Virus record (IMG/VR): IMGVR_UViG_3300047510_001118
Coordinates: 1-64,000 of that record
DNA: 64,000 nt
Reading direction: 5' to 3' (one strand)
The stretch's first letter is position 1, and each line of letters starts with the position of its first letter. A program made the position numbers and the translations under genes. Below are positions 915 to 52,999 of this stretch, in pieces. The notes under the pieces were generated by a model. It saw only the letters and a list, made by a program, of their open reading frames with translations. It searched no databases and was not told the DNA's origin.

Positions 915-943
915 ATTATACATTGACTGTATTTTGTTGTCAA
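915..943 (-). promoter_or_regulatory. sigma70 promoter TTGACA-17-TATAAT
   Basis: Perfect consensus on minus strand. Confidence 0.85.
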
Positions 944-959
944 TACGTTTTGGTGATAT

Positions 960-1051
960 TGGTACCCCCGGCGGGAGTCGAACCCACATTGGCCAATTAT
1001 CTGTTGCTCACGGGATATAAATCCGCTGTTTTACCATTAAACTACAGGGGC
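960..1051 (-). tRNA. tRNA-Ile(TAT), with 22-nt variable region
   Basis: Cloverleaf, T-loop TTCGACT, encoded CCA, anticodon loop TTTATAT. Confidence 0.75.
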
Positions 1052-1062
1052 ATATAAAAGAA

Positions 1063-1172
1063 GCTCGGCTGGCGCTTGAATCCGCGGTAACCCTTCTCTT
1101 CCTGGCACCTCTCTACGTCGTCATGATATCTAGTAGAGTTCAGTGTTGTTCCAGTGTAGTTACTGACCGAGC
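1063..1172 (-). ncRNA. ~110-nt structured RNA between tRNAs
   Basis: Nested stems GCTCGG/CCGAGC, GTAAC/GTTAC, CTGG/CCAG, CTCTAC/GTAGAG. Confidence 0.55.
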
Positions 1173-1177
1173 AAACT

Positions 1178-1251
1178 TGGAGCGGGATACGAGAATCGAA
1201 CTCGTAACTAGAGCTTGGAAGGCTTTCGTTTTACCATTAAACTAATCCCGC
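1178..1251 (-). tRNA. tRNA-Gly(TCC)
   Basis: Cloverleaf, CCA, anticodon TCC. Confidence 0.95.
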
Positions 1252-1256
1252 ATAAA

Positions 1257-1331
1257 TGGTACACCGTAGGAGAATCGAACTCCTCTTACCTGCGTGAAAG
1301 GCGGGTGTCCTAACCGATAGACGAACGGTGC
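1257..1331 (-). tRNA. tRNA-Glu(TTC)
   Basis: Cloverleaf, CCA, anticodon TTC. Confidence 0.95.
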
Positions 1332-1335
1332 TTTG

Positions 1336-2121
1336 TTAAAGATATTTCTGTATTCTTTCTGCTATATTAGCCTGTAATTCTAATTTCATAGTGCCGTTTT
1401 CAGCACCATTGGAATGATATTGTTTAAAAAAATCTATACAATCAATACCACGTCCCATGATACGATCAAAAACTTCGATGTTTTCTTTTTCGTCGTCTCC
1501 GAATCGAACCACAGTCCATTTCAATTTATAATGATTTAATACTTTTACTAACTGTGTATAACTTTTAGAATGTTTTCTAATATACCATTCTCTTGTCTGC
1601 GACAATTGAAAAGCCATACGTTTTACTAATTCTTTGTGTACTTCTATAGGATAATCGTCTGGATTATATTCTACATCGCCATAATTGGGACTTTTTTCAA
1701 ACACATATCTTTTCCCATTATGTTTAAATGAACTTACAATATGCGGAAATGTAAAGTCTGTTACTAGCACATGATCTGGCTGTCCGTGCTTTTCTAAATA
1801 TTGTAAAAGTCTTTTATGGTAACCAACAAAATGGGCACCATTCAAACTACGATTAACTACTGTTCCGGGCAACAAGTTTGGCCAACTAGAATTAAGTTCT
1901 TGTTGTCTTAGATATGCCCAAACAGCAGATTCTATATTTTTTGTCGGCATTGGCTCTTCAACTTTATTTTCAATCTTATGTTTTAGATACCATTTGAACG
2001 CCTGAGGAAAATTTTTATGAAACCGAAGACTCCAAGTTCTAGGAGCAGTTTCATCTAAAATTTGATCTGCTAAACAGTTGTTTCCGTTACTTTGACAATC
2101 GCCTAATACTAATATTTTCAT
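1336..2121 (-). CDS. hypothetical protein, SGNH/GDSL-like N-terminus
   Basis: 261 aa, 'KILVLGDCQS' resembles the GDS block; AT-rich insertion in the tRNA array. Confidence 0.6.
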   Translation of the reverse strand: MKILVLGDCQSNGNNCLADQILDETAPRTWSLRFHKNFPQAFKWYLKHKIENKVEEPMPTKNIESAVWAYLRQQELNSSWPNLLPGTVVNRSLNGAHFVGYHKRLLQYLEKHGQPDHVLVTDFTFPHIVSSFKHNGKRYVFEKSPNYGDVEYNPDDYPIEVHKELVKRMAFQLSQTREWYIRKHSKSYTQLVKVLNHYKLKWTVVRFGDDEKENIEVFDRIMGRGIDCIDFFKQYHSNGAENGTMKLELQANIAERIQKYL

Positions 2122-2129
2122 AATTTATA

Positions 2130-2204
2130 TGGTGGAGGATGGGAGGATCGAACTCCCAACTCATGCTTGCAAAGCACATGTGTTCCCATTAGCACCAATC
2201 CCCC
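2130..2204 (-). tRNA. tRNA-Ala(TGC)
   Basis: G3:U70 pair, anticodon TGC, CCA. Confidence 0.95.
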
Positions 2205-2206
2205 AT

Positions 2207-2392
2207 TTAATCTTTATCAGGACAATCTGGATCTATATCCTGATCGTAATACTCGTTCTTCATTATTGCTTCATCAAACTGTTCGTTATCTGACTTTTTC
2301 TTTTTACTAAAGATAGTATCCCAGTTGTTGTCAAAGGTTTTTTGATCAACACTAAATGGTCTTGGTTTACTACCCTTTCCACCGTCTGACAT
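2207..2392 (-). CDS. small conserved phage protein (MSDGGKGSKPRP...)
   Basis: Strong AAGGAG SD; fills the gap between tRNAs. Confidence 0.75.
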   Translation of the reverse strand: MSDGGKGSKPRPFSVDQKTFDNNWDTIFSKKKKSDNEQFDEAIMKNEYYDQDIDPDCPDKD

Positions 2393-2408
2393 AACATCTC
2401 CTTAAAAT

Positions 2409-2485
2409 TGGCTGGCCTACCTGGGCTCGAACCAGGGACCCTTTGATTAACAGTCAAATGCTACTACCAACTGAGCTATAGGCCA
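2409..2485 (-). tRNA. tRNA-Asn(GTT)
   Basis: Cloverleaf, anticodon GTT. Confidence 0.95.
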
Positions 2486-2493
2486 ATAAAACT

Positions 2494-2568
2494 TGGTACC
2501 TGGTGACAGTTTCGAACTGCCGACCCTCTCGGTGTAAACGAGACGCTCTACCCCTGAGCTAACCAGGC
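2494..2568 (-). tRNA. tRNA-Val(TAC)
   Basis: Cloverleaf, anticodon TAC. Confidence 0.95.
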
Positions 2569-2578
2569 AAACTAACAT

Positions 2579-2656
2579 TGGTCGGAGTACAAGGATTCGA
2601 ACCTTGGACCCCCTGGTCCCAAACCAGGTGCGCTAGCCAGACTGCGCCACACTCCG
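2579..2656 (-). tRNA. tRNA-Pro(TGG)
   Basis: Cloverleaf, anticodon TGG. Confidence 0.95.
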
Positions 2657-2657
2657 A

Positions 2658-2810
2658 TTAACTTGGTATTACATGCGGTATATACGGAACTGCTCTTGGA
2701 CCACCATAGAGTTGTTCAAAAAGTTTTTTAGCCTCTTGCGGTGTCGCCGCATAGATTCTTTTCTTTTCTTCACCACTTGGTGTTCTTACAGTTGTTTCAT
2801 ACATTGGCAT
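2658..2810 (-). CDS. small hypothetical protein (MPMYETTVRTP..., 50 aa)
   Basis: AGGAG SD just after the tRNA-Gly CCA; start corrected from the ORF track. Confidence 0.7.
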   Translation of the reverse strand: MPMYETTVRTPSGEEKKRIYAATPQEAKKLFEQLYGGPRAVPYIPHVIPS

Positions 2811-2822
2811 ATAATAACTCCT

Positions 2823-2898
2823 TGGAGCGGGATAAGAGGCTCGAACTCTCGACCTATACCTTGGCAAGGTATCGCTCTACCAACTGAGCTAATCCCGC
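2823..2898 (-). tRNA. tRNA-Gly(GCC)
   Basis: Cloverleaf, anticodon GCC. Confidence 0.95.
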
Positions 2899-2906
2899 AT
2901 AAATTT

Positions 2907-2941
2907 TGGTGCCCCAAGAGAGACTCGAACTCTCACAGAGC
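2907..2941 (-). pseudogene. isolated 3' half of a tRNA (T-arm, acceptor 3' strand, CCA)
   Basis: GAGAG-TTCGAGT-CTCTC-TTGGGGC-ACCA with no upstream arms. Confidence 0.8.
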
Positions 2942-2945
2942 AAAT

Positions 2946-3022
2946 TGGTGCCTCAGGAGGGACTCGAACCCTCAAAATTTGGCTTCTAAGACCAACACGT
3001 ATACCAATTCCGTCACCGAGGC
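2946..3022 (-). tRNA. tRNA-Leu(TAG), short variable loop
   Basis: Leu-type D-loop GGAATTGGTATAC, anticodon TAG, A73. Confidence 0.9.
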
Positions 3023-3456
3023 GTCTTTCTTTCTTCCCACTTGGCTTTGATTGCTTCTGCTATCTTTGCTTTGTGTTCCGGAGACTTAGTTTTACCTAAG
3101 TTTCCTTTTCCTGCCTTACTTGCTGTTTTACGAGCTTGTAACGCACGAGCTTTTTCTAAACCGTGTTTTTCAACAGTTCTTTCCCAAATAGTTTTGCCAC
3201 TGTTTTCAACTTGATCTTGCCTATTCTCTTGTGCCGTCCCCCAATACAGATGATTAGGATTACCGCACTTAGCATTATGACAAGCATGACATAAATGAAC
3301 TTTATGTCCTGTTGGAACAGTTGTATCTAATAAATGTGCTAACAGTCCTTTGAAATAGTAACTGCCAGCACCTCGTTCAACACAGGCTTCATCTAACTTG
3401 AGATGGTTCTGTCTTTCTGCCTTAGGTAGTAAAATGTATTCTTCTATTAGTTTCAT
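3013..3456 (-). CDS. HNH homing endonuclease with NUMOD3-like C-terminus
   Basis: HLCHACHNAKCGNPNHLYWGTAQEN motif; GKTKSPEHKAKIAEA; start taken at MKLIEEY. Confidence 0.8.
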   Translation of the reverse strand: MKLIEEYILLPKAERQNHLKLDEACVERGAGSYYFKGLLAHLLDTTVPTGHKVHLCHACHNAKCGNPNHLYWGTAQENRQDQVENSGKTIWERTVEKHGLEKARALQARKTASKAGKGNLGKTKSPEHKAKIAEAIKAKWEERKTPR

Positions 3457-3484
3457 ACATTTATTTATGCTAAACACGACAAAA

Positions 3485-3511
3485 GCGTGTCTACCATTCC
3501 ACCACCAGGGC
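3485..3511 (-). pseudogene. isolated 5' half of a tRNA-Leu-like gene
   Basis: GCCCTGG-TGGTGGAATGGTAGACACGC, then abrupt loss of tRNA similarity. Confidence 0.75.
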
Positions 3512-3518
3512 AAAAAAT

Positions 3519-3593
3519 TGGTGCCGGATGTCGGGATCGAACTGACGACCTACCGCTTACAAGGCGGTTGCTCTACCACTGAGCTAATCCGGC
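3519..3593 (-). tRNA. tRNA-Thr(TGT)
   Basis: Cloverleaf, anticodon TGT. Confidence 0.95.
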
Positions 3594-3617
3594 GTGATTC
3601 TATTTATGAAAACTATT

Positions 3618-3692
3618 TGGCGGTCTCAACGAGAATCGAACTCGTCCCTACGGCGTGACAGGCCATTATACTAACCGATATACTATGAGACC
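3618..3692 (-). tRNA. tRNA-Asp(GTC)
   Basis: Cloverleaf, anticodon GTC. Confidence 0.95.
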
Positions 3693-3768
3693 ATATAGAA
3701 GCACACAGACTAACTACCAGAAACACTTATAGTGTCATTACTCGGTTCGAGCCAATGTGCTTTTATAT
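3693..3768 (-). ncRNA. inter-tRNA structured RNA A (shared closing stem)
   Basis: ATATAAAAGCACA...TGTGCTTCTATAT terminal stem. Confidence 0.5.
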
Positions 3769-3857
3769 GGTGGAGCCTGAAGGAATTGAACCTAACTGCC
3801 AGCCACCCAACAATATTATGGCAACGGATTTACAGTCCGCCGTTGGGAACAGGCTCC
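3768..3857 (-). tRNA. atypical tRNA-Tyr(GTA)
   Basis: Anticodon arm GCGGA-CTGTAAA-TCCGT, 8-bp acceptor, no D-stem, long V-arm. Confidence 0.7.
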
Positions 3858-3872
3858 AAACTTACGCGAAAT

Positions 3873-3884
3873 TTTTAAAGAACA
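3873..3884 (-). promoter_or_regulatory. boxA-like antitermination element TGTTCTTTAAAA
   Basis: Matches rrn boxA consensus TGCTCTTTAACA; lies downstream of the internal promoter. Confidence 0.6.
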
Positions 3885-3890
3885 AACAGT

Positions 3891-3983
3891 TGGTGGAAGG
3901 TGTGGGATTCGAACCCACGCACCGCATTTTGTACGGTGGACGGTTTAGCAAACCGCTGCCTTCGGCCACTCAGCCAACCTTCC
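3891..3983 (-). tRNA. tRNA-Ser(GCT)
   Basis: Long V-arm, anticodon GCT. Confidence 0.95.
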
Positions 3984-3995
3984 TAACTTGTGTCT

Positions 3996-4024
3996 ATTAT
4001 ACGACAAGTTTTTTAACTTGTCAA
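3996..4024 (-). promoter_or_regulatory. internal sigma70 promoter TTGACA-17-TATAAT with palindromic spacer
   Basis: TTGACAAGTTAAAAAACTTGTCGTATAAT. Confidence 0.85.
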
Positions 4025-4032
4025 CTACTTTA

Positions 4033-4122
4033 TGGCGGAAGCGGTGAGATTCGAACTCACGGACCATTTCTGATCGTCTGTTTTCAAGACAGGTGCAATA
4101 AACCGGACTCTGCCACACTTCC
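4033..4122 (-). tRNA. tRNA-Ser(TGA)
   Basis: Long V-arm, anticodon TGA, G73. Confidence 0.95.
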
Positions 4123-4130
4123 ATAAATTT

Positions 4131-4211
4131 TGGTGCCCCTAATCGGATTCGAACCGATAGTTATGACACTCCTTTTGAGAGAGCCGCCTTTACCAATTTG
4201 GCCATAGGGGC
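4131..4211 (-). tRNA. tRNA-Leu(CAA)
   Basis: Anticodon loop CTCAAAA; reduced V-arm. Confidence 0.9.
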
Positions 4212-4216
4212 AATAC

Positions 4217-4288
4217 TGGCGCCTCTGGAGAGATTCGAACTCCCATAACCTGGTTTAGAAGACCTGGCACTGCTCCATCAGCAGAGGC
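4217..4288 (-). tRNA. tRNA-Arg(TCT), compact D-arm
   Basis: Anticodon loop CTTCTAA; 72 nt. Confidence 0.8.
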
Positions 4289-4291
4289 TAC

Positions 4292-4375
4292 TGGTGCGAG
4301 AGACGGGACTCGAACCCGTATGCCTTTCGACGGCAGATTTTAAGTCTGCTGCGTATACCATTCCGCCACTCTCGC
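4292..4375 (-). tRNA. tRNA-Leu(TAA)
   Basis: Cloverleaf, anticodon TAA. Confidence 0.95.
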
Positions 4376-4379
4376 ATAC

Positions 4380-4455
4380 TGGTGCCGCTCCTTGGGATCG
4401 AACCAAGTTCCTCGGTGCTTCAAACCGGTGCAATGACCACATTTGCTAAAGCGGC
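4380..4455 (-). tRNA. tRNA-Phe(GAA)
   Basis: Anticodon loop TTGAAGC. Confidence 0.9.
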
Positions 4456-4504
4456 AAAAGAAAAACTCTACACACTAACTATGTTAACCGAGTAGAGCCA
4501 TAAT

Positions 4505-4579
4505 TGGGGTGAAGCCGGGAATCGAACCCTGCCTTACTGTTTCACAGACAGCCGTGCGTACCACTACACTAGCAACACC
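4505..4579 (-). tRNA. tRNA-His(GTG)
   Basis: G-1:C73, anticodon GTG. Confidence 0.92.
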
Positions 4580-4585
4580 ATTGTT

Positions 4586-4659
4586 TGGTATCGCGTACGG
4601 GGATCGAACCCGCCTGACTAGGTTGAAAGCCTAGTGACCTCCCAGAAGTCCAACGCGAT
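4586..4659 (-). tRNA. tRNA-Glu(TTC), second copy, divergent
   Basis: Anticodon loop CTTTCAA. Confidence 0.88.
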
Positions 4660-4665
4660 GTTGTT

Positions 4666-4743
4666 TGGCACCCCTGGAAGGACTTGAACCTTCGACTCCT
4701 ACCTTCGCAAGGTAGTACTCTGATTCCGCTGAGTTACAGGGGT
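4666..4743 (-). tRNA. tRNA-Arg(GCG)
   Basis: CTACC-TTGCGAA-GGTAG anticodon arm. Confidence 0.85.
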
Positions 4744-4905
4744 ATTAATACGTTCTAAAGCATCACGTCGCATTTTAAACGGACGATGCTCATCGGGACG
4801 ATGTACAATCAAATATTCCACACCGTCAATGTTTTCGGTCACACGGGTATCGTCACAGACAAATCGCTCATTATTAAAACGATTTTTAAACATAGTTTGT
4901 TTCAT
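4699..4905 (-). CDS. small hypothetical protein; 3' end overlaps tRNA-Arg(GCG)
   Basis: AAGGAG SD; 68 aa. Confidence 0.65.
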   Translation of the reverse strand: MKQTMFKNRFNNERFVCDDTRVTENIDGVEYLIVHRPDEHRPFKMRRDALERINTPVTQRNQSTTLRR

Positions 4906-4927
4906 GACAATCTCCTTAAAGTTGTTT

Positions 4928-5002
4928 TGGCCGGCCTGGAGAGATTCGAACTCCCGACTGCTGGTTTCGAAGACCAGAACTCTTCCACTGAGCTACAGGC
5001 CG
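4928..5002 (-). tRNA. tRNA-Arg(TCG)
   Basis: Anticodon loop CTTCGAA. Confidence 0.92.
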
Positions 5003-5010
5003 ATAATGTT

Positions 5011-5084
5011 TGGCACGGGTGCTAGGGCTCGAACCTAGAATAACAGAGTCAAAGTCTGTGGTGTTACCATTACACTACACCCGA
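5011..5084 (-). tRNA. tRNA-Gln(TTG)
   Basis: Anticodon TTG, G73. Confidence 0.93.
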
Positions 5085-5091
5085 TCAGAAC

Positions 5092-5166
5092 TGGTGGTAA
5101 TGGAAAGAGTCGAACTTTCACAGCGCACCGTATGAAGGTGTTGCACTACCATTATGCTACATTACC
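5092..5166 (-). tRNA. tRNA-CAT (elongator Met or Ile2)
   Basis: Anticodon CAT; lacks initiator C1:A72 mismatch and 3 G-C pairs. Confidence 0.85.
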
Positions 5167-5319
5167 ATATAGAAACATACTAATGAACCAGCCTGACGCA
5201 GCCGTACGCTTGGCAGATCGTTTCCAATCTGTTTCTCGCTTTTCTCGGTACTCTGTATGTTCAGGATTCCGCAGTCCTCAATACAATCGCTTGTAAGGGC
5301 AACTAATATGTTTTTATAT
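5167..5319 (-). ncRNA. inter-tRNA structured RNA B (shared closing stem)
   Basis: ATATAAAAACATA...TATGTTTCTATAT terminal stem, internal hairpins. Confidence 0.55.
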
Positions 5320-5392
5320 GGTAGGGGCACAGAGAATCGAACTCTGATTAATAGGTTAAAAGCCTACTACTTTGCCGTTAAGTTATACCCCC
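5319..5392 (-). tRNA. tRNA-Lys(TTT)
   Basis: Anticodon TTT. Confidence 0.93.
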
Positions 5393-5518
5393 ACGATCTT
5401 ACCACTCTTGTCACTTTCCATAACAGGATCTCCTATTTTAAATTTTTGTCGATAAAATATATCAATACTACAAGCATGAGTAAAACGGCCACCGCCCCAT
5501 TTTAGTTCCCCTTATAGT

Positions 5519-5593
5519 TGGTGCCTAATCTTGGGAACGATCCAAGGACCTATGCGTTATCAACACATTGCTCTACCACTGAGCTAATTAGGC
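5519..5593 (-). tRNA. tRNA-Ile(GAT)
   Basis: Anticodon GAT; variant T-loop ATCGTTC. Confidence 0.9.
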
Positions 5594-5799
5594 AAAATGA
5601 ATTTGTAAGTAGTTGCCCCATCGTTATAGCAACCATTCACCCGTGTAATTAAGCCGGCCGGGACTCGGTACGTCACTTGGAATACTTAACCAACGTGTCT
5701 ATTTTTTGCTAGGGTTTTGCGCCCCCCGTTGCCTTACTATAGTCAGCTCTTCGAAGAAGCCTGCTATAGTGTCTTTCTCTTGCTGACACTTACAAAACT

Positions 5800-5877
5800 T
5801 GGAGTGAGGAGTCGGATTTGAACCGACGGCTTTACAGTTTTGCAGACTGTTGCATTGGGCCTCTCTGCCATCCTCAC
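5800..5877 (-). tRNA. tRNA-Cys(GCA)
   Basis: Anticodon GCA, U73. Confidence 0.93.
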
Positions 5878-5883
5878 ATTACT

Positions 5884-5960
5884 TGGCGACCCGGGAAGGA
5901 TTTGAACCTCCGACATTTGGTTTTGGAGACCAACGTTCTGCCAGACTGAACTACCGAGCC
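5884..5960 (-). tRNA. tRNA-Trp(CCA)
   Basis: Anticodon CCA, G73. Confidence 0.93.
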
Positions 5961-6232
5961 ATAAATTATAACACACTCACGATCGGGAATCCCTAATCCA
6001 TAAACAAACTATGTCTGTTTATAAAGAATGTGTGTATTAAAACATTCTAACAACGCAGGCTATGCCTTACTACGCTATGAGTGTAGCCGTCCCTATAGAA
6101 TGCTTTAATACGCTACCGTTTTACACATCTAGGTTATCGCCCTAGACTTACCATCAGGTAGGCCGCCCACATTATAGTCTTGTTTAAAGTGTAGACAGGG
6201 TCGCGTTCCCTATACCACTTTACTGCTGAACC

Positions 6233-6415
6233 TTAACGATCAGTGTGCCAAAGAAGACTGCTCTTCTTTAATGCTTCTCTGAGTGTACGGGCTCTGTCAA
6301 ACTTATCTTGAATAAGTTTGCGTGTCTGTTCATCGCTTAATGTATAAGCAGACACGTAAGCCTGTTCAACAATCTTCTTGTTTAATTTTGTGTAATCTAT
6401 GTCTTTTGTTTCCAT
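6233..6415 (-). CDS. hypothetical protein, first gene after the attenuator
   Basis: AAGGAG SD, 60 aa. Confidence 0.7.
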   Translation of the reverse strand: METKDIDYTKLNKKIVEQAYVSAYTLSDEQTRKLIQDKFDRARTLREALKKSSLLWHTDR

Positions 6416-6427
6416 TTTTCTCCTTTA

Positions 6428-6464
6428 ACAAACAAAAACCCCAGGGTTTTTAATCCTGGGGTCC
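6428..6464 (-). terminator. intrinsic terminator (attenuator) ahead of the tRNA array
   Basis: ACCCCAGG-loop-CCTGGGGT followed by TTTTGTTTG. Confidence 0.85.
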
Positions 6465-6490
6465 TTTTGAAGTTTGAGTTTACTTTGTTG

Positions 6491-6637
6491 TTAACTCATG
6501 ATCTCCATGGACCCCGGCTGTAGCTCTGGTGTACGATCATTACCTAGACTAATCTCGCACACTGACCAATAAGAGAGCGCAAAGCCTCCCATTTGGGCTA
6601 TGTGTTTAAATTGTCTTTGTAATGACGTTGTTTTCAT
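6491..6637 (-). CDS. putative attenuator leader peptide, 48 aa, containing all 20 amino acids
   Basis: MKTTSLQRQFKHIAQMGGFALSYWSVCEISLGNDRTPELQPGSMEIMS*; upstream AAGGA; 3' end pairs with the terminator 5' arm. Confidence 0.75.
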   Translation of the reverse strand: MKTTSLQRQFKHIAQMGGFALSYWSVCEISLGNDRTPELQPGSMEIMS

Positions 6638-6688
6638 TTGCTTCTTTTTTTCCTTAAATTGTTAGGCGAATTCCTAACGCATGATCTA

Positions 6689-6717
6689 ATTATAGTGTCG
6701 ATATTTTCTTGCGTCAA
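6689..6717 (-). promoter_or_regulatory. sigma70 promoter TTGACG-17-TATAAT for the leader/tRNA operon
   Basis: Near-consensus hexamers. Confidence 0.8.
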
Positions 6718-6774
6718 CCAGTTTTGGACGGATTGAACATTGTTAAAATAACAACAGAAATTATCAACTGTTTT

Positions 6775-6803
6775 ATTATATGAGTATTTATATATCTTGT
6801 CAA
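6775..6803 (-). promoter_or_regulatory. sigma70 promoter TTGACA-17-TATAAT containing T4-type late promoter TATAAATA
   Basis: TTGACAAGATATATAAATACTCATATAAT. Confidence 0.75.
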
Positions 6804-6897
6804 TAACCATTGTAAAATACGGCTAAAACGTTGTTTTTTAGCAACAGCAATAAGAAAATGCCCAACGATAAATATAAGATAACGAGACGAATTACCT

Positions 6898-8322
6898 ATG
6901 GCCATACGAGTACAACGATCACTTAGACTTGATGCTAAAACCAAAAATGAACTAGATAGACTAACCGGCGCCCGCGGAGAAATCTTCTACGACAATACTG
7001 CTAAAACTCTTAGAGTATTTGACGGGAATACTGCCGGCGGCATGGAGTTGCTCAAAGCAGACTTGAGTAACATAGCAGGCAGCACCGGTGGCGGTGGAGG
7101 CGATGTTGATTTTGGTAATAAAAACGTAGTCGCTACAAGTTTTGAAGGGGATTTAACTGGAGATGTTACTGGTACAGTCAGTGATATTTCTAATCATGAC
7201 CTCGGAGATCTTGGAGATGTAAATGTTACAGGAATACAAAGCGGTCAGGTTCTATATTATACAGGATCTGAATGGCAGGCTACAACACTAGAAAGTACAT
7301 TTAACGGCGGAAACGTCGGTGGTATAACTAACTTTCTAAATGCGTTAGAAAGCTCTTCAACATCAACCGGCGGTGTAGTAGTCAGCGGTGGTTTAGGAAT
7401 TGGTAAGAATACTAGAATCGGCGGTAGCCTATTTGTCACAGATAAATTTACTGTAGCGGCTACTACCGGTAACACTGAAGTATCAGGAACACTAAGAGTA
7501 GGCTCAACAGTCGAAGTTCGCAGTCAAGCAGAATTAAGATTTTTTGATTCTGACAATACACAATACATTTCCCTACGATCTCCAACAAACGTTACAACAA
7601 GTTTGATTTTTACATTGCCGGCCACAGACGGTACGTCCGGCCAGGTTTTAACAACCAACGGCTTGGGGCAGTTAAACTGGGCCACTGTTTCCGGAGGCGG
7701 TGGCGGTGGTGGTGGCGGAACAACACCACCAGGTGGATCAAACTCGCAGGTACAGTTTAACAGCAACGGTGAGTTTGCTGGAGACTCTGACTTCACCTAT
7801 GATCAATTAACAAATACGATCACAGTTGGCACTGTACTTGCTGACATTACTGGCGATCTAACAGGAGATGTCACAGGTAATGTCACAGGAGATGTCACAG
7901 GAGATGTCACAGGTAATGTCACAGGTAATGTCACAGGAGATGTCACATCAACAGGAACTAGTACATTCAGTGATGCTGAGATTTCTGGAGGCAGTATAGA
8001 CAATACTCCAGTGGGTGCGACTACAGCCAATTCGGGAGCGTTTACAACATTAACCAGTAACGGTGCTACAACCTTTACTAACAATACAGATAGTACTAGT
8101 GTAGCAACAGGAGCAGTAAAAGTTTCAGGCGGACTAGGTGTTGCTCTAAACACTAATGTTGGTGGATCAATGACAGTAAATAACACTATTACTTCAAACG
8201 GAAACATTGTTGCTAATTCTAATGTAATAATTAACAACACACCAACGCAGTCTAATCATGCTGCAAATAAGTCATATGTGGACAGTCGTGCGTTAGCCCT
8301 TTCGATAGCATTAGGTGGATAA
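6898..8322 (+). CDS. tail fibre-like virion protein
   Basis: N-terminal GEIFYD..LRVFDG (Mtd-N-like), Gly/Thr-rich, GDVT repeats, C-terminal HAANKSYVD. Confidence 0.75.
   Translation: MAIRVQRSLRLDAKTKNELDRLTGARGEIFYDNTAKTLRVFDGNTAGGMELLKADLSNIAGSTGGGGGDVDFGNKNVVATSFEGDLTGDVTGTVSDISNHDLGDLGDVNVTGIQSGQVLYYTGSEWQATTLESTFNGGNVGGITNFLNALESSSTSTGGVVVSGGLGIGKNTRIGGSLFVTDKFTVAATTGNTEVSGTLRVGSTVEVRSQAELRFFDSDNTQYISLRSPTNVTTSLIFTLPATDGTSGQVLTTNGLGQLNWATVSGGGGGGGGGTTPPGGSNSQVQFNSNGEFAGDSDFTYDQLTNTITVGTVLADITGDLTGDVTGNVTGDVTGDVTGNVTGNVTGDVTSTGTSTFSDAEISGGSIDNTPVGATTANSGAFTTLTSNGATTFTNNTDSTSVATGAVKVSGGLGVALNTNVGGSMTVNNTITSNGNIVANSNVIINNTPTQSNHAANKSYVDSRALALSIALGG
7848..7947 (+). repeat. 12-bp tandem repeat (ACAGGAGATGTC/ACAGGTAATGTC) encoding G[DN]VT
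   Basis: Directly visible in-frame tandem array. Confidence 0.9.
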
Positions 8323-17269: not shown

Positions 17270-17371
17270 AAAAGTTCCTAAAATAAAAAGGGCTGTATTT
17301 CTTCAGCCCTAACTATGCATATTAACGCATTAGTAAACAAAACGTAAGTCTTTTTGGTGAAACTGATAAAA

Positions 17372-17395
17372 GAAAAGGCTCCGAAGAGCCTTTTC
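17372..17395 (-). terminator. terminator after tmRNA
   Basis: gaaaaggctc-cgaa-gagccttttc. Confidence 0.8.
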
Positions 17396-17752
17396 ACTAT
17401 TTTGGGTTACAAGGTATAGTTACCCCGGAGCTGCAGTTTCTTAGGCTGCTAGTTCAAAACGCTTGCCTGTTACAGCGAAGTCAGTTTTGAAATACTCAAA
17501 TGTAGATGCGTTTGCATTTACTAGTTTTGCTTGATTAACGGTCATCGCCTACCGTGTTGCCTCTTTCGCTATCTCGCCATGTCGAAACCGGTCGGGCCCA
17601 TCATAAAAGGACTAGAGCAAATACTACGAGTACAACTACTACACCTATTCCTAGATGAGTTAGATCATCGTTCATACTAATCTCCTTATGGTGGACCCGG
17701 GGGGAATCGAACCCCCGTCCACAACGCCTTCACTACGAAGGAATTACAACAA
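17396..17752 (-). ncRNA. ssrA: two-piece (circularly permuted) tmRNA
   Basis: Acceptor piece ends GGTTCGATTCCCCCCGGGTCCACCA (17689). Coding piece starts GGGCCCGACCGGTTTCGAC (17599). G3:U70. Tag ANASTFEYFKTDFAVTGKRFELAA* at 17441-17515. Confidence 0.9.
17601..17675 (-). CDS. 24-aa hydrophobic peptide inside the tmRNA intervening segment
   Basis: AAGGAG SD + MNDDLTHLGIGVVVVLVVFALVLL*. Confidence 0.5.
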   Translation of the reverse strand: MNDDLTHLGIGVVVVLVVFALVLL

Positions 17753-17756
17753 TACC

Positions 17757-17960
17757 TTAGGCTGGCTGAATATTGCTAGCCTGTTGACCTTTCATGCCCA
17801 TAGTTACTTCAAACCTTACACTCTGTCCTTCTTGTAGGCTTTTGAAGCCACTTGACTGAATCTGTGAAAAGTGAGCAAATAAGTCTGCGCCACCATCGTC
17901 CGGTGTAATGAACCCAAAACCTTTGGCGTCGTTAAACCATTTTACTTTTCCTGTTACCAT
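17757..17960 (-). CDS. cspA: cold-shock protein
   Basis: [20 protein letters not shown] motifs. Confidence 0.95.
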
Positions 17961-25531: not shown

Positions 25532-25695
25532 TATCGACAAATGCTAAAACTTTTAACGCCGTTTAAACTAAACGTCTTTAGATAATTTTCCATGTCATCA
25601 TTATAGGCTATCATTTTGGCCGGTGTCATAAATTTGTATTGTAACATCAACCATACAGTGTAGTCAAGCCACCAATCTATAGGTGTGTATATCAT
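25531..25695 (-). CDS. small hypothetical protein, 54 aa
   Basis: ATGA and TAATG overlaps with both neighbours. Confidence 0.55.
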   Translation of the reverse strand: MIYTPIDWWLDYTVWLMLQYKFMTPAKMIAYNDDMENYLKTFSLNGVKSFSICR

Positions 25696-27734
25696 TTTTC
25701 GTGTGCGATAAATTCGCCGTTCCAGTTGGCTCCTAAATCTTGTTGTTTCATAAACTCACAACGTTCAATCCAGATCTTATAATACTTGTCCATCTGTCCA
25801 CCAAATAGTCCTTTCATCTTAGCACACATGGCGGCTGCTTCGTCAAACTTTTTCTGTTTATACAAGGCATGCATTTTGTCATGTTGTTCCTTGTCTTTAC
25901 TATAATCTTCGCCACGTGTACGAATTACTGTGTAAATTAAATCTGCTACAGTTTTACCCTTAGGCTGTAAGTTGTCTAATAGCAAGTAGAAGAAGTCGTC
26001 TTTGGTTCTGTTGTATGTTTCAGCACCAATGATAGCCAACACTCCGTAGGCTTTACAACGAGCTTCTAATCGAGCCGCAGTACTAACCATGTCACCTAAG
26101 ATGTCGTAACTGTGTCTATCAGTTGATCCCATCTCGCCAATAAAGCCAATGCCTGTGTTACAACCCCAACCCATAGCCGCAGGCGGTAATCCTTGTGCTT
26201 CCATTTCTTTGGTATAAGCATCAACGGCATCCAACATCTCTAAACCAACTTTAACAATAGTGTGTGCGTGATTGGGATCATCAATCGGAGCACCATGTAT
26301 GTGCATACTCGCATCGCCTACATACTTAATAACCATACCTTTGTTATCCATAATAGGTTTACTGATGCTGTCCATGTAGCCGTTCATATATTTGCCAAGT
26401 CCAGCAACATCGTCTCCATAGTGTTCACCAATCGGTGTGAAGCCGCGCAAGTCACTAAACATAACTGATACGTCTTTGCGAACACCACGCTTGATTAAGT
26501 CTGGATCCTTTTGTAGCATCTCTACTACTTCTTTAGAGCAGTAGCCAGCAAACTGTTTCTTAATTGCCTGCTTCTGTAAGAATTCGCTTACAAACTTAAC
26601 GCCATAACAATGAAGAGCAACGATAATAAGCCCAAACGTGATTGCAGTCGCGTCCGCCAAGACGAGCCAATTATTGAAAGCGTAGATAGTACCAGGAACG
26701 ATGGCACCAATAGTAACCACAGTAGCACCAATGCCAACATAAGTCCACCTCGATAAGAAAATTAATAATATGCCAATTCCTAGTAATGCTAGAATTTCAA
26801 CACCGGCGGCATAGTCAGGTCGTTGAATTGTTACACCATTTATCATTGTGCCTAATACTGCGGCTTGTACATCCTGCGGCCATGTTCCTTGAACTGGTGT
26901 TGGCACAGGGTTACCTAAACCTGTAGCGGCAACACCTACAATAACTACAGCACCAGCAAAGTCTTTAGGAAGGTTAACTGCTGAAGCAGACTTTGAACGT
27001 TGACTCCAGTCAATCCATACACGACCTTTGTCGTCTGTGGCAATAGGACCAAACTTTGGTATGCGCATTTTTTCTACGCCGCCTTCGAACAACTTAATCT
27101 GTGTTGTTGAATCTCCTGCAGCCACACGTAATGCTTCCATAGCAATACTAGGATAGACTACACCGTCAACGGCAATTACCAAAGGCATTCGTCTTACTAC
27201 GTTGTCGTTTTCTTCTTCGGTGTGAATAGTTCCTGTGCCAACTGCACGACTTTCAAGCACAGGTACGTTGGCCATTATGCCAGCATACTGTGTTATTTGA
27301 TTAGCATACTCGTTTTTAATTACTGCTGTACTAGGTTGTCGAGGAGTATTCTTATTTTTATTTTCTGGAGTGTTTGGCAGTATTACAGGAAACTTGTTCA
27401 TAGTTTCTGCTAGGACACGATCCTTACCAAATCTATCTTCCTCTGACAGTAGTATATTAAACACAACCAGTCCTGCGTTACGTTTGTACAAGTCTTCAAT
27501 TATCTTAGCGTAAACATCTCTAGGGAAAGGATACTGCCCGTATTTGGCTATAGTATCTTCATCAATGTTTACTGTGTAAATGTTGTTTTCAGTAGGTGCT
27601 TTGGCCGTTATTAATTCGTCAAAGTATTTCAAACGAACATTCTCAACAAACGAAGGGTCTGCAATTCGTATGCCCACTACTAACGCTAGGGTTAGTAGGG
27701 CAGTCCAAGGGCTTAAAAGAAATTTTTTCATCAT
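25692..27734 (-). CDS. CHASE2-domain class III adenylate/guanylate cyclase
   Basis: CHASE2, 3 TM, FSDLRGFT, KYVGD, AARLE. Confidence 0.92.
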   Translation of the reverse strand: MMKKFLLSPWTALLTLALVVGIRIADPSFVENVRLKYFDELITAKAPTENNIYTVNIDEDTIAKYGQYPFPRDVYAKIIEDLYKRNAGLVVFNILLSEEDRFGKDRVLAETMNKFPVILPNTPENKNKNTPRQPSTAVIKNEYANQITQYAGIMANVPVLESRAVGTGTIHTEEENDNVVRRMPLVIAVDGVVYPSIAMEALRVAAGDSTTQIKLFEGGVEKMRIPKFGPIATDDKGRVWIDWSQRSKSASAVNLPKDFAGAVVIVGVAATGLGNPVPTPVQGTWPQDVQAAVLGTMINGVTIQRPDYAAGVEILALLGIGILLIFLSRWTYVGIGATVVTIGAIVPGTIYAFNNWLVLADATAITFGLIIVALHCYGVKFVSEFLQKQAIKKQFAGYCSKEVVEMLQKDPDLIKRGVRKDVSVMFSDLRGFTPIGEHYGDDVAGLGKYMNGYMDSISKPIMDNKGMVIKYVGDASMHIHGAPIDDPNHAHTIVKVGLEMLDAVDAYTKEMEAQGLPPAAMGWGCNTGIGFIGEMGSTDRHSYDILGDMVSTAARLEARCKAYGVLAIIGAETYNRTKDDFFYLLLDNLQPKGKTVADLIYTVIRTRGEDYSKDKEQHDKMHALYKQKKFDEAAAMCAKMKGLFGGQMDKYYKIWIERCEFMKQQDLGANWNGEFIAHEK

Positions 27735-32922: not shown

Positions 32923-34047
32923 CTAAGGTTTGTCCGTTGTAAGCATGTCATTTCTTACGAACCCACCCCTTCCGTTTTTACTCTTAACGGTACTCCATTC
33001 CTGATTATGAACTGTGACTGTGACTTCTGTGCCTTTTTCAAAAAACCAAACTCTTGTACTGTTATCATCATCTGTTCTTCTTACATAATAATGATTGTTA
33101 AAATACATAGTTGAACCATTTATAATTTCTTTTTTAGGTCTTGGTCCAATTTCCGTTCCGTAGTCCCCGGCCTTGCTTTCTGTCTTAGTTTCTGCTCCTG
33201 TTGTTGCAGGCGGCGCATCTGTTGTAACAGGCTTGACATCATCTTTCTTCTCCTCTATAACAGCAGGTTTAGAAACCTTGTATCTCCATAAACCCTTTTT
33301 CTGACCTTCAACAATCATATCATGTACTGCTTGCTCGATAGCCACACGCACAGCATAGGTAGTTGGTTCGTTTAATGCCATACCATTTTCTAATTCAAGT
33401 GCTTTAGTTCCTGCGTCTACAAATCTTAGAACACCTACGTTGTGTTGTGTGCTATAGATAGTCTTACTAACAGCATTGGTGATTAACACTTCTCCGCTGT
33501 TTACGCTGACTAATCTTAGGCTAATAACAATCTCATCTACACGATATTGTTGGCTTCCGCCAATGCCTAAAAATCTAGCACCGTTTCCGCCGCTTCTTAT
33601 ATTGGTGTCGTAACCGATGATACCACCCTCAATCATTACGCCAGCCACTGTCATTGGTTTAAGGGGCTTGGCATCTTTGCCCTCATAAACTTCCCGTTGG
33701 TTGCGAATCAATTGTCTTTCTTTTATGAGATTATCTAACCCGACACGTTCGACCACCTTAAACCAACCCTTTGCGTCCTGTAGTGCTTTAATTAAAAACA
33801 CTTCAGAACCCTGTGTCACAGCCTTGCTGAACACTGCTAATCTATCATTGGGCTTCATTTGCCCAGTTTTATCTAAAAATCCATAAACAGCAATGGTAAT
33901 CGGTGGACCATCCAATTCTGGCAATTTATTAATTAGATTTTCTCTTGGCTGAAGAGCTATTGGCTCTTCTTTAGATGCTTCCATCTGTATATGGGCGCAT
34001 CCTGACAGCGCAGTGGCTACTAATAATGTTAATAGTAATCGTTTCAT
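32923..34047 (-). CDS. csgG: curli secretion lipoprotein CsgG with SH3-like C-terminal domain
   Basis: LSGC lipobox, F.DKTGQ.K, VVERVGLDNL.KERQ.IR. Confidence 0.9.
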   Translation of the reverse strand: MKRLLLTLLVATALSGCAHIQMEASKEEPIALQPRENLINKLPELDGPPITIAVYGFLDKTGQMKPNDRLAVFSKAVTQGSEVFLIKALQDAKGWFKVVERVGLDNLIKERQLIRNQREVYEGKDAKPLKPMTVAGVMIEGGIIGYDTNIRSGGNGARFLGIGGSQQYRVDEIVISLRLVSVNSGEVLITNAVSKTIYSTQHNVGVLRFVDAGTKALELENGMALNEPTTYAVRVAIEQAVHDMIVEGQKKGLWRYKVSKPAVIEEKKDDVKPVTTDAPPATTGAETKTESKAGDYGTEIGPRPKKEIINGSTMYFNNHYYVRRTDDDNSTRVWFFEKGTEVTVTVHNQEWSTVKSKNGRGGFVRNDMLTTDKP

Positions 34048-40104: not shown

Positions 40105-40185
40105 ATTGTTATCTCCTTTAATTAAGCAAGATTTAAGTTTGGGCAACTGCCCGTTTATAGGACCCGAAGCATCCTACAATTTTAT

Positions 40186-52961: not shown

Positions 52962-52999
52962 TGTTGCCTCAACTTGCAAAGTATGATATTTAGTACCAC

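What the first reader, a model, noticed from the sequence alone, without database searches (positions are those of the whole stretch)
6428..6717. Pan-tRNA-sensing attenuator: an all-20-amino-acid leader peptide gating the phage tRNA array
Seen in sequence: a sigma70 promoter (6689-6717) precedes a 48-codon ORF (6637-6491) that the ORF track misses. Its first 37 codons contain all 20 amino acids. The whole ORF uses 35 different codons and samples most isoacceptor classes (Leu TTA/CTA/CTC, Ile ATA/ATT, Arg AGA/CGT, Gly GGA/GGC/GGT, Ser TCA/TCT/AGT, Thr ACA/ACG, Ala GCC/GCG). These include rare codons read by tRNAs in the array. Codons 41-48 form the 5' arm of a long hairpin (CCGGGGTCC/GGACCCCAGG, GGAG/CTTC, TGAGTT/AACTCA) with the stop codon at its apex. 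The 3' arm of that hairpin is also the 5' arm of an intrinsic terminator (ACCCCAGG/CCTGGGGT + U tract), so the two structures are mutually exclusive. Established: this is the logic of trp/his ribosome-mediated attenuation, which normally senses one or a few amino acids via repeated codons. Inference: smooth translation to the stop melts the antiterminator and transcription terminates. A stall at any codon before about 37 (starvation, or host anticodon-nuclease defences such as PrrC/VapC/PARIS) lets transcription run into the tRNA array. The phage would thus deploy backup tRNAs on demand.
Basis: partly seen in the sequence, partly recalled or inferred. Interest (0 to 1): 0.95.

Follow-up and report, generated by a model that had tools for sequence, protein, structure and literature searches.

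The report
All-amino-acid leader switch before phage tRNAs
At the head of this giant phage's tRNA gene cluster sits a short translated reading frame that evolution keeps stocked with all 20 amino acids, fused to an RNA switch that either stops or continues transcription; it looks like a sensor of overall decoding capacity that controls the phage's own tRNA supply.

Summary
The 48-codon ORF (6637-6491, minus strand), its near-consensus promoter, the long hairpin with the stop codon at its apex, and the overlapping intrinsic terminator are all present. The element belongs to a family found in more than 200 uncultivated viral contigs, and 104 of 105 loci with enough downstream sequence have a same-strand tRNA array. 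Of 129 distinct leader ORFs (35-53 codons), 113 encode all 20 amino acids, against 1-5% under null models and 0-1 of 129 in the other frames. Rare residues such as Cys and His move between positions but are almost never lost. Codon positions 1, 2 and 3 vary equally, so no particular peptide is conserved. Both the antiterminator and the terminator covary, including at the nucleotide they share.

This supports a ribosome-mediated attenuator that reads decoding of every amino acid. Caveats:
- A conserved small helical protein gene and a conserved structured RNA lie between the terminator and the first tRNA.
- Extra promoters exist, inside this array and before the first tRNA in a quarter of relatives.
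- Leader codons are not enriched for codons read by the array's tRNAs.
- The physiological trigger is untested.

I found no description in Rfam, GenBank phages or the searchable literature.

The parts
6689..6717 (-). Sigma-70 promoter of the leader transcript: -35 TTGACG at 6717-6712, 17-nt spacer, -10 TATAAT at 6694-6689.
   Evidence: scores it 11/12. An equivalent promoter scoring at least 10/12 lies upstream of the leader in 115 of 115 relatives tested, and at least 11/12 in 107 of them.
6661..6678 (-). 5'-UTR hairpin GUUAGG/CCUAAC. It is followed by an AAGGA Shine-Dalgarno-like box at 6655-6651.
   Evidence: Present in the fold. Relatives have a hairpin at the same place with different stem sequences, seen by eye. 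One subclass lacks the UTR and starts translation about 10 nt after the -10 box, so it is leaderless or nearly so.
6491..6637 (-). Leader ORF of 48 codons plus TAA. It encodes all 20 amino acids, and all 20 are present by codon 37.
   Evidence: The ORF is open in all 129 distinct homologues, and 113 of them have all 20 amino acids. Codon-position entropy is flat.
6536..6626 (-). Long hairpin formed by the body of the ORF, about codons 4-34. It is a possible pause or timing structure.
   Evidence: The covariance model alignment gives 81.8% paired against 70.0% in shuffles (0/500), and 23 of 30 pairs have changes on both sides. The swap test gives -30.5 against -26.8 kcal/mol.
6516..6535 (-). 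Single-stranded linker covering the ...DRTPE codons. It is nearly invariant at the nucleotide level, and its role is unexplained.
6509..6515 (-). Arm A (GGGGUCC), the 5' arm of the antiterminator. It lies inside the ORF at codons 41-43.
   Evidence: It is read in three different frames in different homologues (60/20/4). It covaries with arm B.
6458..6515 (-). Antiterminator hairpin with helices P1, P2 and P3. The stop codon (6493-6491) lies at the apex.
   Evidence: It forms in 70 of 70 distinct homologues, with median energy -24 kcal/mol. Paired cells are 91.2% against 74.7% in shuffles, and the covariation score is 0.388 against 0.157 (0/500).
6431..6464 (-). Intrinsic terminator: arm B GGACCCCAGG (6464-6455), a 9-nt loop, arm C CCUGGGGU(UU) (6445-6436) and a U tract. 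Arm B is shared with the antiterminator.
   Evidence: In 83 distinct sequences 100% of cells are paired, and 6 of 10 pairs have changes on both sides. Its energy is -16.2 kcal/mol.
6233..6415 (-). First gene after the terminator: a conserved small protein of 60 aa (motif HTLTxEQxxKLIxxKxERA) with a strong Shine-Dalgarno sequence at 6425-6420.
   Evidence: A small ORF starts after the terminator in 100 of 129 relatives; nearly all are 49-65 aa members of this family starting about 13-26 nt downstream, and about five are unrelated ORFs. It varies like a protein-coding gene. It is predicted to be a two-helix hairpin with pLDDT 88. It has no Pfam, PHROG, NCBIfam, PDB sequence or PDB fold match.
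5961..6225 (-). Conserved structured non-coding RNA between the small gene and the first tRNA.
   Evidence: Conserved at 70-90% nucleotide identity in many relatives. There are 33 consensus pairs, 19 with compensatory changes. The folding z-score is -4.3. There is no Rfam match.
960..5960 (-). Array of 27 tRNA genes on the same strand. It covers 19 amino acids; no tRNA-Tyr was detected.

Best explanation
This is a ribosome-mediated transcription attenuator whose leader ORF samples all 20 amino acids. It sets how much transcription from a strong early-type promoter runs on into a small protein gene, a structured RNA and the phage tRNA array.

Shown from sequence:
- The transcript can form either a long antiterminator hairpin (arm A with arm B) or a terminator (arm B with arm C).
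- The antiterminator is more stable, and its arm A is made first.
- The leader's stop codon sits at the apex of the antiterminator.

Inferred:
- If the lead ribosome keeps pace with RNA polymerase and reaches the stop codon, it holds the 5' half of the hairpin. Arm B then pairs with arm C and transcription ends.
- If the ribosome is delayed at any codon upstream of arm A, or never loads, arm A captures arm B and polymerase reads through. The delay would come from a scarce cognate aminoacyl-tRNA.
- Because every amino acid is represented upstream of arm A, a shortage of any one charged tRNA raises tRNA-operon transcription, and so does a general slowing of translation. Ample decoding capacity, including that supplied by the phage tRNAs themselves, shuts it down.
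- The result is demand-driven supply with negative feedback.
- The ORF-body hairpin probably tunes the race between ribosome and polymerase.
For: 1. Translation and selection on composition.
- The ORF is open in 129 of 129 distinct homologues despite indels, while the other two frames carry 3-4 stops.
- 113 of 129 have all 20 amino acids. The nulls give about 1% (proteome-composition model and real protein windows), 5% (nucleotide-shuffled open frames), 20% (column shuffle, maximum 36%) and 0/129 and 1/129 (other frames).
- Among 26 clusters below 50% identity, 20 have all 20.
- Cys is present in 77 of 77 canonical members, and its sole copy occupies 18 different alignment columns. His is present in 77 of 77, with its sole copy in 10 columns.
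- Codon-position entropy is flat.

2. The switch.
- Antiterminator helices covary, and so does the terminator.
- The shared arm-B nucleotide is C or U. Its arm-A partner gives G-C 38, A-U 40 and G-U 2. Its arm-C partner gives C-G 39, U-A 20 and U-G 22.
- The antiterminator has median energy -24 against -16.2 kcal/mol for the terminator, and the full-length minimum-free-energy fold uses the antiterminator.

3. Geometry.
- The stop codon starts 15-18 nt after arm A in 71 of 84 members and ends 22-26 nt before arm B in 76 of 84. This holds whichever of three frames reads arm A.
- All 20 amino acids lie in codons wholly upstream of arm A in 97 of 113 leaders, against 28.5 expected.

4. Context.
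- 104 of 105 loci have a same-strand tRNA array starting a few hundred nt downstream.

5. Leader composition tracks the array.
- The L026 and L122 leaders lack Glu and Tyr. In both, tRNA-Glu and tRNA-Tyr lie upstream of the leader; the 20-tRNA downstream array of L026 lacks them, while the L122 locus is cut off after six downstream tRNAs.
- The L152 leader lacks Leu. There tRNA-Leu lies upstream and is absent from the 20 tRNAs downstream.

6. Isoacceptor diversity is modestly raised.
- Leaders use 35.5 distinct codons against 32.7 expected. Both Arg codon boxes are present in 106 of 129 against 74.7 expected.
Against: - No experiment exists. Translation, termination efficiency and read-through are all inferred.
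- Leader codons are not enriched for codons read by the array's own tRNAs (82% against 84% in long ORFs).
- In most leaders the last amino acid to appear (Glu of DRTPE) is only 8-11 nt upstream of arm A. A ribosome waiting there may partly cover the arm.
- In 16 of 113 leaders one amino acid occurs only at or after arm A.
- There are counter-examples to composition tracking. L082 and L107 lack Leu although their arrays have tRNA-Leu, and L160 lacks Cys although its array has tRNA-Cys.
- The array is not fed only through the attenuator. There are 12/12 promoters inside this array at 4024 and 943, and 29 of 115 relatives have a promoter scoring at least 11/12 just before the first tRNA.
- The structural alignments were fitted to the models, which inflates pair counts somewhat.
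- The sequences are related, so shuffle-based counts are not probabilities.
Confidence: 0.68

Rival explanations
1. The mechanism is the same, but the regulated product is mainly the conserved small helical protein and/or the structured RNA directly downstream. The tRNAs would be driven chiefly by their own promoters.
For: The small ORF starts 15-19 nt after the terminator in most relatives. A conserved structured RNA follows it. In 29 of 115 loci a consensus promoter sits between the terminator and the first tRNA, often 38-39 nt before the tRNA. The window has consensus promoters inside the array.
Against: 75% of relatives have no promoter scoring at least 11/12 in that interval. The element is tied to tRNA arrays in 104 of 105 loci. 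Some members lack the small ORF but keep the leader and the array. Leader composition follows array content in three loci.
Confidence: 0.12
2. The element is a general sensor of translation activity or transcription-translation coupling, for example of ribosome availability or inactivation. Amino-acid identity would be irrelevant and the all-20 content a by-product.
For: Any delay or absence of the ribosome gives the same antiterminated outcome, because the antiterminator is the default fold.
Against: A by-product would not keep Cys, His and Trp in 77 of 77 canonical members while their positions move. It would not place all 20 upstream of arm A in 97 of 113 leaders against 28.5 expected. It would not drop Glu and Tyr, or Leu, exactly where those tRNAs lie outside the downstream array.
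Confidence: 0.08
3. The ORF encodes a functional micro-protein on its own short transcript that ends at the terminator. The hairpins would serve only mRNA stability and termination.
For: The ORF is conserved and has a promoter, a ribosome-binding region and a terminator. It has been called as a 'hypothetical protein' in some metagenome annotations.
Against: There is no excess variation at third codon positions. The apparent peptide conservation coincides with RNA helices. Residues relocate. The reading frame slides over arm A. There is no family match. This reading explains neither the covarying alternative pairing nor the fixed placement of the stop codon.
Confidence: 0.06
4. The element is an untranslated structured RNA, for example a processing or stability element or a small RNA at the head of the tRNA precursor. 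The open frame would be accidental.
For: The RNA structure is very strong (z = -6.3), and all three hairpins covary.
Against: The frame is open in 129 of 129 members with a conserved ATG and either a Shine-Dalgarno sequence or a leaderless start. The other frames carry 3-4 stops. The all-20 property exists only in the translated frame.
Confidence: 0.03

Closest known systems
Leader-peptide transcription attenuators of enterobacterial amino-acid operons (trp, his, leu, pheA, and the multivalent thr and ilvGMEDA leaders)
   Same: Both have a short translated leader ORF, an intrinsic terminator, and an antiterminator that shares an arm with it. In both, the position of the lead ribosome decides which structure forms, and a stall upstream gives read-through. 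(The family features are from established knowledge; the features of this element are.)
   Different: This leader has no runs of regulatory codons; each of the 20 amino acids appears once or a few times. It has three competing arms rather than four segments, so an untranslated leader should read through, whereas in trp it terminates. The stop codon sits at the hairpin apex. The target is a phage tRNA operon, not biosynthetic enzymes. There is no sequence or Rfam relationship.
T-box riboswitches
   Same: The regulatory goal is the same: to couple expression of translation-supply genes to the charging state of tRNA by choosing between a terminator and an antiterminator.
   Different: A T-box binds one specific uncharged tRNA directly and has no ORF. 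There was no T-box match in the Rfam search at E up to 10.
Stall-sensing leader ORFs of resistance and stress genes (ermC and cat type, bmrCD, vmlR, topAI-toiL), and leaderless poly-Cys short ORF attenuators of mycobacteria (bioRxiv 10.1101/834739, listed)
   Same: In all of these a ribosome stalled on a short upstream ORF remodels downstream RNA to switch on distal genes. Like one subclass of this family, the mycobacterial ORFs are leaderless.
   Different: Those systems respond to a drug-dependent arrest peptide or to a single amino acid. This leader shows no conserved peptide, and it is selected for a complete amino-acid repertoire.
pyrBI-type attenuation (sensing of coupling between polymerase and ribosome)
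   Same: The outcome depends on how closely the ribosome follows RNA polymerase through a leader ORF that overlaps the terminator region. (Established knowledge.)
   Different: In pyrBI the variable is polymerase speed, set by UTP. Here the inferred variable is ribosome speed at any codon.

Membership tests
Ribosome-mediated (leader-peptide) transcription attenuators | A short leader ORF upstream of the regulated genes that is translated | tested here: met
   The evidence is comparative only. The ORF is open in 129 of 129 members, with a conserved ATG and either a Shine-Dalgarno sequence or a leaderless start. The other frames are closed. Composition is selected in this frame only. Translation itself was not observed.
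Ribosome-mediated (leader-peptide) transcription attenuators | An intrinsic terminator between the leader and the regulated genes | tested here: met
   There is a 10-pair stem plus a U tract at 6464-6431. In 83 distinct sequences 100% of cells are paired, and 6 pairs covary.
Ribosome-mediated (leader-peptide) transcription attenuators | A mutually exclusive antiterminator that shares a strand with the terminator and whose 5' arm is reachable by the translating ribosome | tested here: met
   Arm B pairs with arm A or with arm C, and the shared nucleotide covaries with both partners. Arm A lies inside the ORF, and the stop codon follows it by 15-18 nt.
Ribosome-mediated (leader-peptide) transcription attenuators | Regulatory codons: clustered codons for the amino acid(s) made by the operon | tested here: not met
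   There are no codon runs. Every amino acid is present, most of the rare ones exactly once. This is the feature that makes the element a new variant.
Ribosome-mediated (leader-peptide) transcription attenuators | A pause hairpin that synchronises polymerase and ribosome | tested here: inconclusive
   A covarying hairpin spans the ORF body and is followed by an invariant single-stranded linker. Pausing cannot be tested with these tools.
Ribosome-mediated (leader-peptide) transcription attenuators | Read-through responds to supply of charged tRNA | not testable with these tools
   This needs reporter assays, in vitro transcription-translation, or Term-seq.
T-box riboswitch (Rfam RF00230) | Stem I with a specifier loop, and the conserved T-box sequence in the antiterminator bulge | tested here: not met
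   There was no T-box match in cmscan of 5900-7000 at E up to 10, nor at gathering score over the whole window.
Any curated RNA family (Rfam 15) | A match to a covariance model | tested here: not met
   Only chance-level matches were found over the element.
Any curated protein family for the leader peptide | A match to a Pfam or PHROG profile | tested here: not met
   No families matched.

The most novel reading that the evidence does not exclude
A widespread group of uncultivated large phages, apparently from freshwater, carries a cis-acting 'whole-alphabet' decoding sensor. The leader ORF is kept complete for all 20 amino acids so that a shortage of any charged tRNA de-represses the phage's own tRNA operon. 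The shortage could come from starvation, from host shut-off, or from tRNA-cleaving defence systems. The operon's products then feed back to switch it off. This would be the first attenuator that senses all amino acids at once, and the first described regulatory logic for phage tRNA arrays.
Probability: 0.6. Interest if true: 0.92.

Novelty: new variant of a known kind. Interest (0 to 1): 0.88.

Why it matters
Phage tRNA arrays have been discussed for decades. The explanations offered include codon compensation, replacement of degraded host tRNAs, and escape from tRNA-targeting defences (PMC10264068, PMC11555353). How their expression is controlled is essentially unknown.

This element would give that control a mechanism. 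It would also extend classical attenuation from sensing one to three amino acids to sensing all twenty, with a design principle that can be read directly from sequence: completeness of the amino-acid repertoire upstream of the switch arm.

It is directly testable. The promoter is of the sigma-70 consensus type and the parts are small.

It also shows a new kind of selection on a coding sequence. Selection acts on which amino acids are present, not on their order.

If it works as proposed, the switch could serve as a compact reporter of global decoding capacity.

Tried and rejected
- **MAFFT plus RNAalifold on the whole element.** It found only the terminator, because the alignment is not structure-consistent. 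I replaced it with covariance-model alignments and an alignment-free swap test.
- **GenBank phage collection.** There was no match to the element even at E up to 1. The only hits were to tRNA-Trp, in records that look like bacterial tuf-secE-nusG regions, so I dropped them.
- **185,579 species-representative genomes.** There were 19 exact terminator-pattern matches. None of the 11 candidate metagenome-assembled-genome (MAG) loci tested contains the element, so no prophage or host assignment came from this. The remaining eight hits (seven actinomycete genomes and one Clostridium genome) were not tested and were taken as chance terminator matches; I did not examine them further.
- **The 16-mer pattern search.** About a fifth of the new loci it returned (16 of 80) were chance matches, which I filtered out by context.
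- **Codon-anticodon matching between leader and array.**
- **Family searches for the downstream small protein.** Pfam, PHROGs, NCBIfam, a PDB sequence profile and a PDB fold search gave nothing.
- **Reverse logic (translation promotes read-through).** I rejected it. The stop codon is 22-26 nt from arm B, so a terminating ribosome should not reach the terminator, and the antiterminator is the default fold.
- **Literature.** Five targeted full-text searches found no description of such a leader. A sixth search failed on term format.
Full report
**1. What is in the window**

On the minus strand, a near-consensus sigma-70 promoter (TTGACG-17-TATAAT, 6717-6689; 11/12) is followed by these features:
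- a small 5' hairpin at 6678-6661;
- an AAGGA box;
- an ATG at 6637 opening a 48-codon ORF that ends at TAA 6493-6491.

The ORF contains all 20 amino acids by codon 37 and uses 35 distinct codons. Codons 41-43 contain GGGGUCC (6515-6509). This pairs with GGACCCC (6464-6458) to close a three-tier hairpin with the stop codon at its apex. The 3' arm of that hairpin, extended to GGACCCCAGG, is also the 5' arm of a terminator (CCUGGGGU plus a U tract, to 6431). The minimum-free-energy fold of the whole leader uses the long hairpin rather than the terminator and is far more stable than shuffles (z = -6.3).

- After the terminator come a 60-aa ORF with a strong ribosome-binding site (6415-6233) and 265 nt of non-coding sequence. 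Only then does the first of 27 same-strand tRNA genes begin (5960-960).
- The array contains two further 12/12 promoters at 4024 and 943.
- A 12/12 consensus promoter at 6803-6775 lies about 86 nt upstream of the leader's own promoter.

**2. It is a large family, always at the head of tRNA arrays**

A protein-pattern scan with the 48-aa peptide found relatives at 95-48% identity in other IMG/VR contigs. The window itself is part of a 278-kb viral contig.

One used the terminator sequence and the other used a conserved 16-mer inside the ORF. After context filtering they gave 129 distinct leader ORFs.

In 104 of 105 loci with more than 1.2 kb downstream, a same-strand tRNA array follows. In the first set the first tRNA starts 185-943 nt after the terminator.

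The element was not found elsewhere:
- GenBank phages, no match even at E up to 1;
- 185,579 representative prokaryote genomes;
- Rfam;
- Pfam and PHROGs.

The exact peptide exists in metagenome gene calls, but only as 'hypothetical protein'.

**3. The all-20 property is selected**

113 of 129 distinct leaders (35-53 codons) contain all 20 amino acids. Another 14 contain 19.

The null expectations are much lower:

| Null model | All-20 frequency |
|---|---|
| Random draws from the window's proteome composition, 46-48 aa | about 1% |
| Real 46-48-aa protein segments from the window | 0.8-1.1% |
| Nucleotide-shuffled versions that stay open | 5% |
| The other two frames of the same DNA | 0/129 and 1/129 |
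| Shuffling residues within alignment columns | 20% (maximum 36% of 2000) against 88% observed |

Further support:
- In the window, this is the only one of 66 small ATG-ORFs with the property.
- Reducing the set to 26 clusters below 50% identity still leaves 20 with all 20.
- Cys (0.8% of the proteome) is present in 77 of 77 canonical members, exactly once in 60. That single copy occupies 18 different alignment columns.
- His is present in 77 of 77, with its sole copy in 10 columns. Trp is present exactly once in all 77.

Residues are therefore lost and regained at other positions without the repertoire ever lapsing.

No particular peptide is conserved. Codon positions 1, 2 and 3 vary equally (entropy 1.10/1.04/1.10), whereas the neighbouring small gene shows the normal coding pattern (1.27/1.09/1.51). 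The apparent peptide motifs (AKQAGFMPxYWS, ISL, NDR) coincide with strands of RNA helices.

**4. The RNA switch is real**

*Antiterminator.* It forms in 70 of 70 distinct sequences, with median energy -24 kcal/mol against -16.2 for the terminator.
- In a covariance-model alignment of 81 distinct canonical and variant sequences, 91.2% of cells are paired, against 74.7% in shuffles (0/500).
- The covariation score is 0.388 against 0.157, and 15 of 18 pairs change on both sides.
- Slid registers drop to 24-52% paired.

*Terminator.* All cells are paired in 83 distinct sequences, and 6 of 10 pairs have changes on both sides.

*The shared nucleotide.* The arm-B position that is C in the window is U in about half of the family.
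- Its arm-A partner is then A (G-C 38, A-U 40, G-U 2).
- Its arm-C partner is A or wobble G (C-G 39, U-A 20, U-G 22).
- Other natural arm triplets show the same three-way compensation. Examples are AGGGUUCC / GGAACCCUGG / CCAGGGUU and AGGGUCU / AGACCCUAGG / CCUAGGGU.

Both mutually exclusive pairings are thus maintained by evolution. Alignment-free swap tests agree: native 5' and 3' halves fold 3.4-3.7 kcal/mol better than chimeras (p at most 2e-4).

Two caveats apply. The model-fitted alignments lean towards the model. The sequences are related, so shuffle counts are not probabilities.

**5. Geometry links the ORF to the switch**

Arm A is read in three different frames in different homologues (60/20/4). 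Even so, the stop codon starts 15-18 nt after arm A in 71 of 84 members and ends 22-26 nt before arm B in 76 of 84. What is conserved is therefore the place where the ribosome stops, not the peptide.

All 20 amino acids are already present in codons wholly upstream of arm A in 97 of 113 complete leaders, against 28.5 expected if residues were placed at random.

**6. Mechanism**

Shown: two competing structures, with the antiterminator as the default, and a leader ORF that ends at the antiterminator's apex.

Inferred, from the known size of the ribosome footprint and the logic of trp- and his-type attenuation:
- A ribosome that reaches the stop codon occupies the 5' strands of the two upper helices and abuts arm A. 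Arm B is then left for arm C and transcription terminates.
- A ribosome delayed further upstream, or absent, leaves arm A free to capture arm B as soon as arm B is made, and polymerase reads through.
- Because each amino acid is represented in the sensing region, slow decoding of any of them de-represses the operon.
- Abundant charged tRNA, including the phage's own, represses it.

The ORF body is itself a covarying long hairpin (81.8% paired against 70.0%; 23 of 30 pairs with changes on both sides). It is followed by an almost invariant single-stranded linker. I suggest this is a pause and timing device, but that is speculation.

Two translation-start designs exist in the family: a 5' UTR with a hairpin and Shine-Dalgarno sequence, or an ATG about 10 nt after the -10 box.

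**7. Does the leader track the tRNA array?**

Supportive cases:
- The L026 and L122 leaders lack Glu and Tyr. In these phages tRNA-Glu and tRNA-Tyr lie upstream of the leader; the 20-tRNA downstream array of L026 lacks them, while the L122 locus is cut off after six downstream tRNAs.
- The L152 leader lacks Leu. Its tRNA-Leu lies upstream and is absent from the 20 downstream tRNAs.

Contrary cases:
- L082 and L107 lack Leu, but a distal tRNA-Leu is present in the array.
- L160 lacks Cys, but its array has tRNA-Cys.

Other codon-level results:
- Isoacceptor diversity is modestly raised. Leaders use 35.5 distinct codons against 32.7 expected. Both Arg boxes are present in 106 of 129 against 74.7 expected, and both Leu boxes in 104 against 81.
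- Leader codons are not preferentially those read by the array's tRNAs (82% against 84%).

**8. Limits on 'gating the array'**

- The first product of read-through is a conserved small protein. An ORF follows the terminator in 100 of 129 loci, nearly all of this family. It is predicted to be a two-helix hairpin (pLDDT 88) and has no known relatives.
- Next comes a conserved structured RNA.
- In 29 of 115 loci a near-consensus promoter lies between the terminator and the first tRNA, often 38-39 nt before the tRNA.
- In the window, internal consensus promoters can feed distal tRNAs independently.

The attenuator therefore modulates transcription into the array but does not solely determine it.

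**9. Comparison with known systems, and novelty**

The element works like the classical leader-peptide attenuators and meets their structural criteria. It fails the criterion of clustered regulatory codons, and instead samples the whole amino-acid alphabet. Its default state is also inverted. It is not a T-box and matches no Rfam family.

Five successful full-text searches found no description. Recent work on phage tRNAs concerns their role in escaping tRNA-targeting defences, not their regulation (PMC10264068, PMC11555353). I classify the element as a new variant of a known kind.

**10. Verdict**

The physiological trigger and the quantitative effect remain to be shown at the bench.

Noticed in passing
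window 17371-17792 (-): The phage carries a permuted (two-piece) tmRNA gene of the betaproteobacterial type. Rfam gives beta_tmRNA 126 bits and tmRNA_permuted 132 bits, and ARAGORN reads a tag ending in LAA. This hints at a betaproteobacterial host and at a phage that invests in ribosome rescue as well as in tRNAs.
   Followed up: partly
window 6233-6415 (-): A conserved small protein of 49-65 aa (motif HTLTxEQxxKLIxxKxERA) lies directly after the attenuator's terminator; an ORF follows the terminator in 100 of 129 related loci, nearly all of this family. AlphaFold predicts a two-helix hairpin (pLDDT 88). It has no Pfam, PHROG, NCBIfam or PDB relative.
   Followed up: partly
window 5961-6225 (-): A conserved structured non-coding RNA lies between the small gene and the first tRNA. 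It is 70-90% identical across many relatives, has 33 consensus pairs (19 with compensatory changes), and folds with z = -4.3. It has no Rfam match and its function is unknown. Its last hairpin abuts tRNA-Trp and overlaps a TGTTATAAT sequence that resembles an extended -10 box.
   Followed up: partly
window 6775-6803 (-), 3996-4024 (-), 915-943 (-): There are three perfect 12/12 sigma-70 consensus promoters. One lies 86 nt upstream of the leader's own promoter, giving a tandem arrangement. One lies inside the array just before tRNA-Ser(gct). One lies at the distal end of the array, upstream of tRNA-Ile(tat) and before a 190-aa ORF.
   Followed up: no
window 6516-6538 (-): The codons N-D-R-T-P-E of the leader are almost invariant at the nucleotide level across the family, including third positions. 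Half of this stretch is single-stranded in every fold. Neither the peptide nor the mapped helices explain the conservation.
   Followed up: partly
window 960-5960 (-): Neither ARAGORN nor Rfam finds a tRNA-Tyr in this 27-tRNA array, although the leader has a Tyr codon and tRNA-Tyr is the first tRNA after the leader in many relatives.
   Followed up: no
window 3013-3513 (-): An HNH / His-Me finger homing-endonuclease-like ORF sits between tRNA genes inside the array (Pfam E = 1e-5, just under the gathering score).
   Followed up: no
window 25692-27734, 32923-34047, 38224-40146, 50634-52979 (all -): The phage has unusual cargo: a CHASE2-adenylate/guanylate cyclase, a CsgG-like curli secretion channel, a full-length Hsp70/DnaK (E = 2e-256), and a class I ribonucleotide reductase large subunit.
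   Followed up: no
loci L026, L122, L152 (related viral contigs): In these phages a few tRNA genes lie upstream of the leader. The leader lacks exactly the amino acids (Glu and Tyr, or Leu) whose tRNAs lie there instead of in the downstream array.
   Followed up: partly
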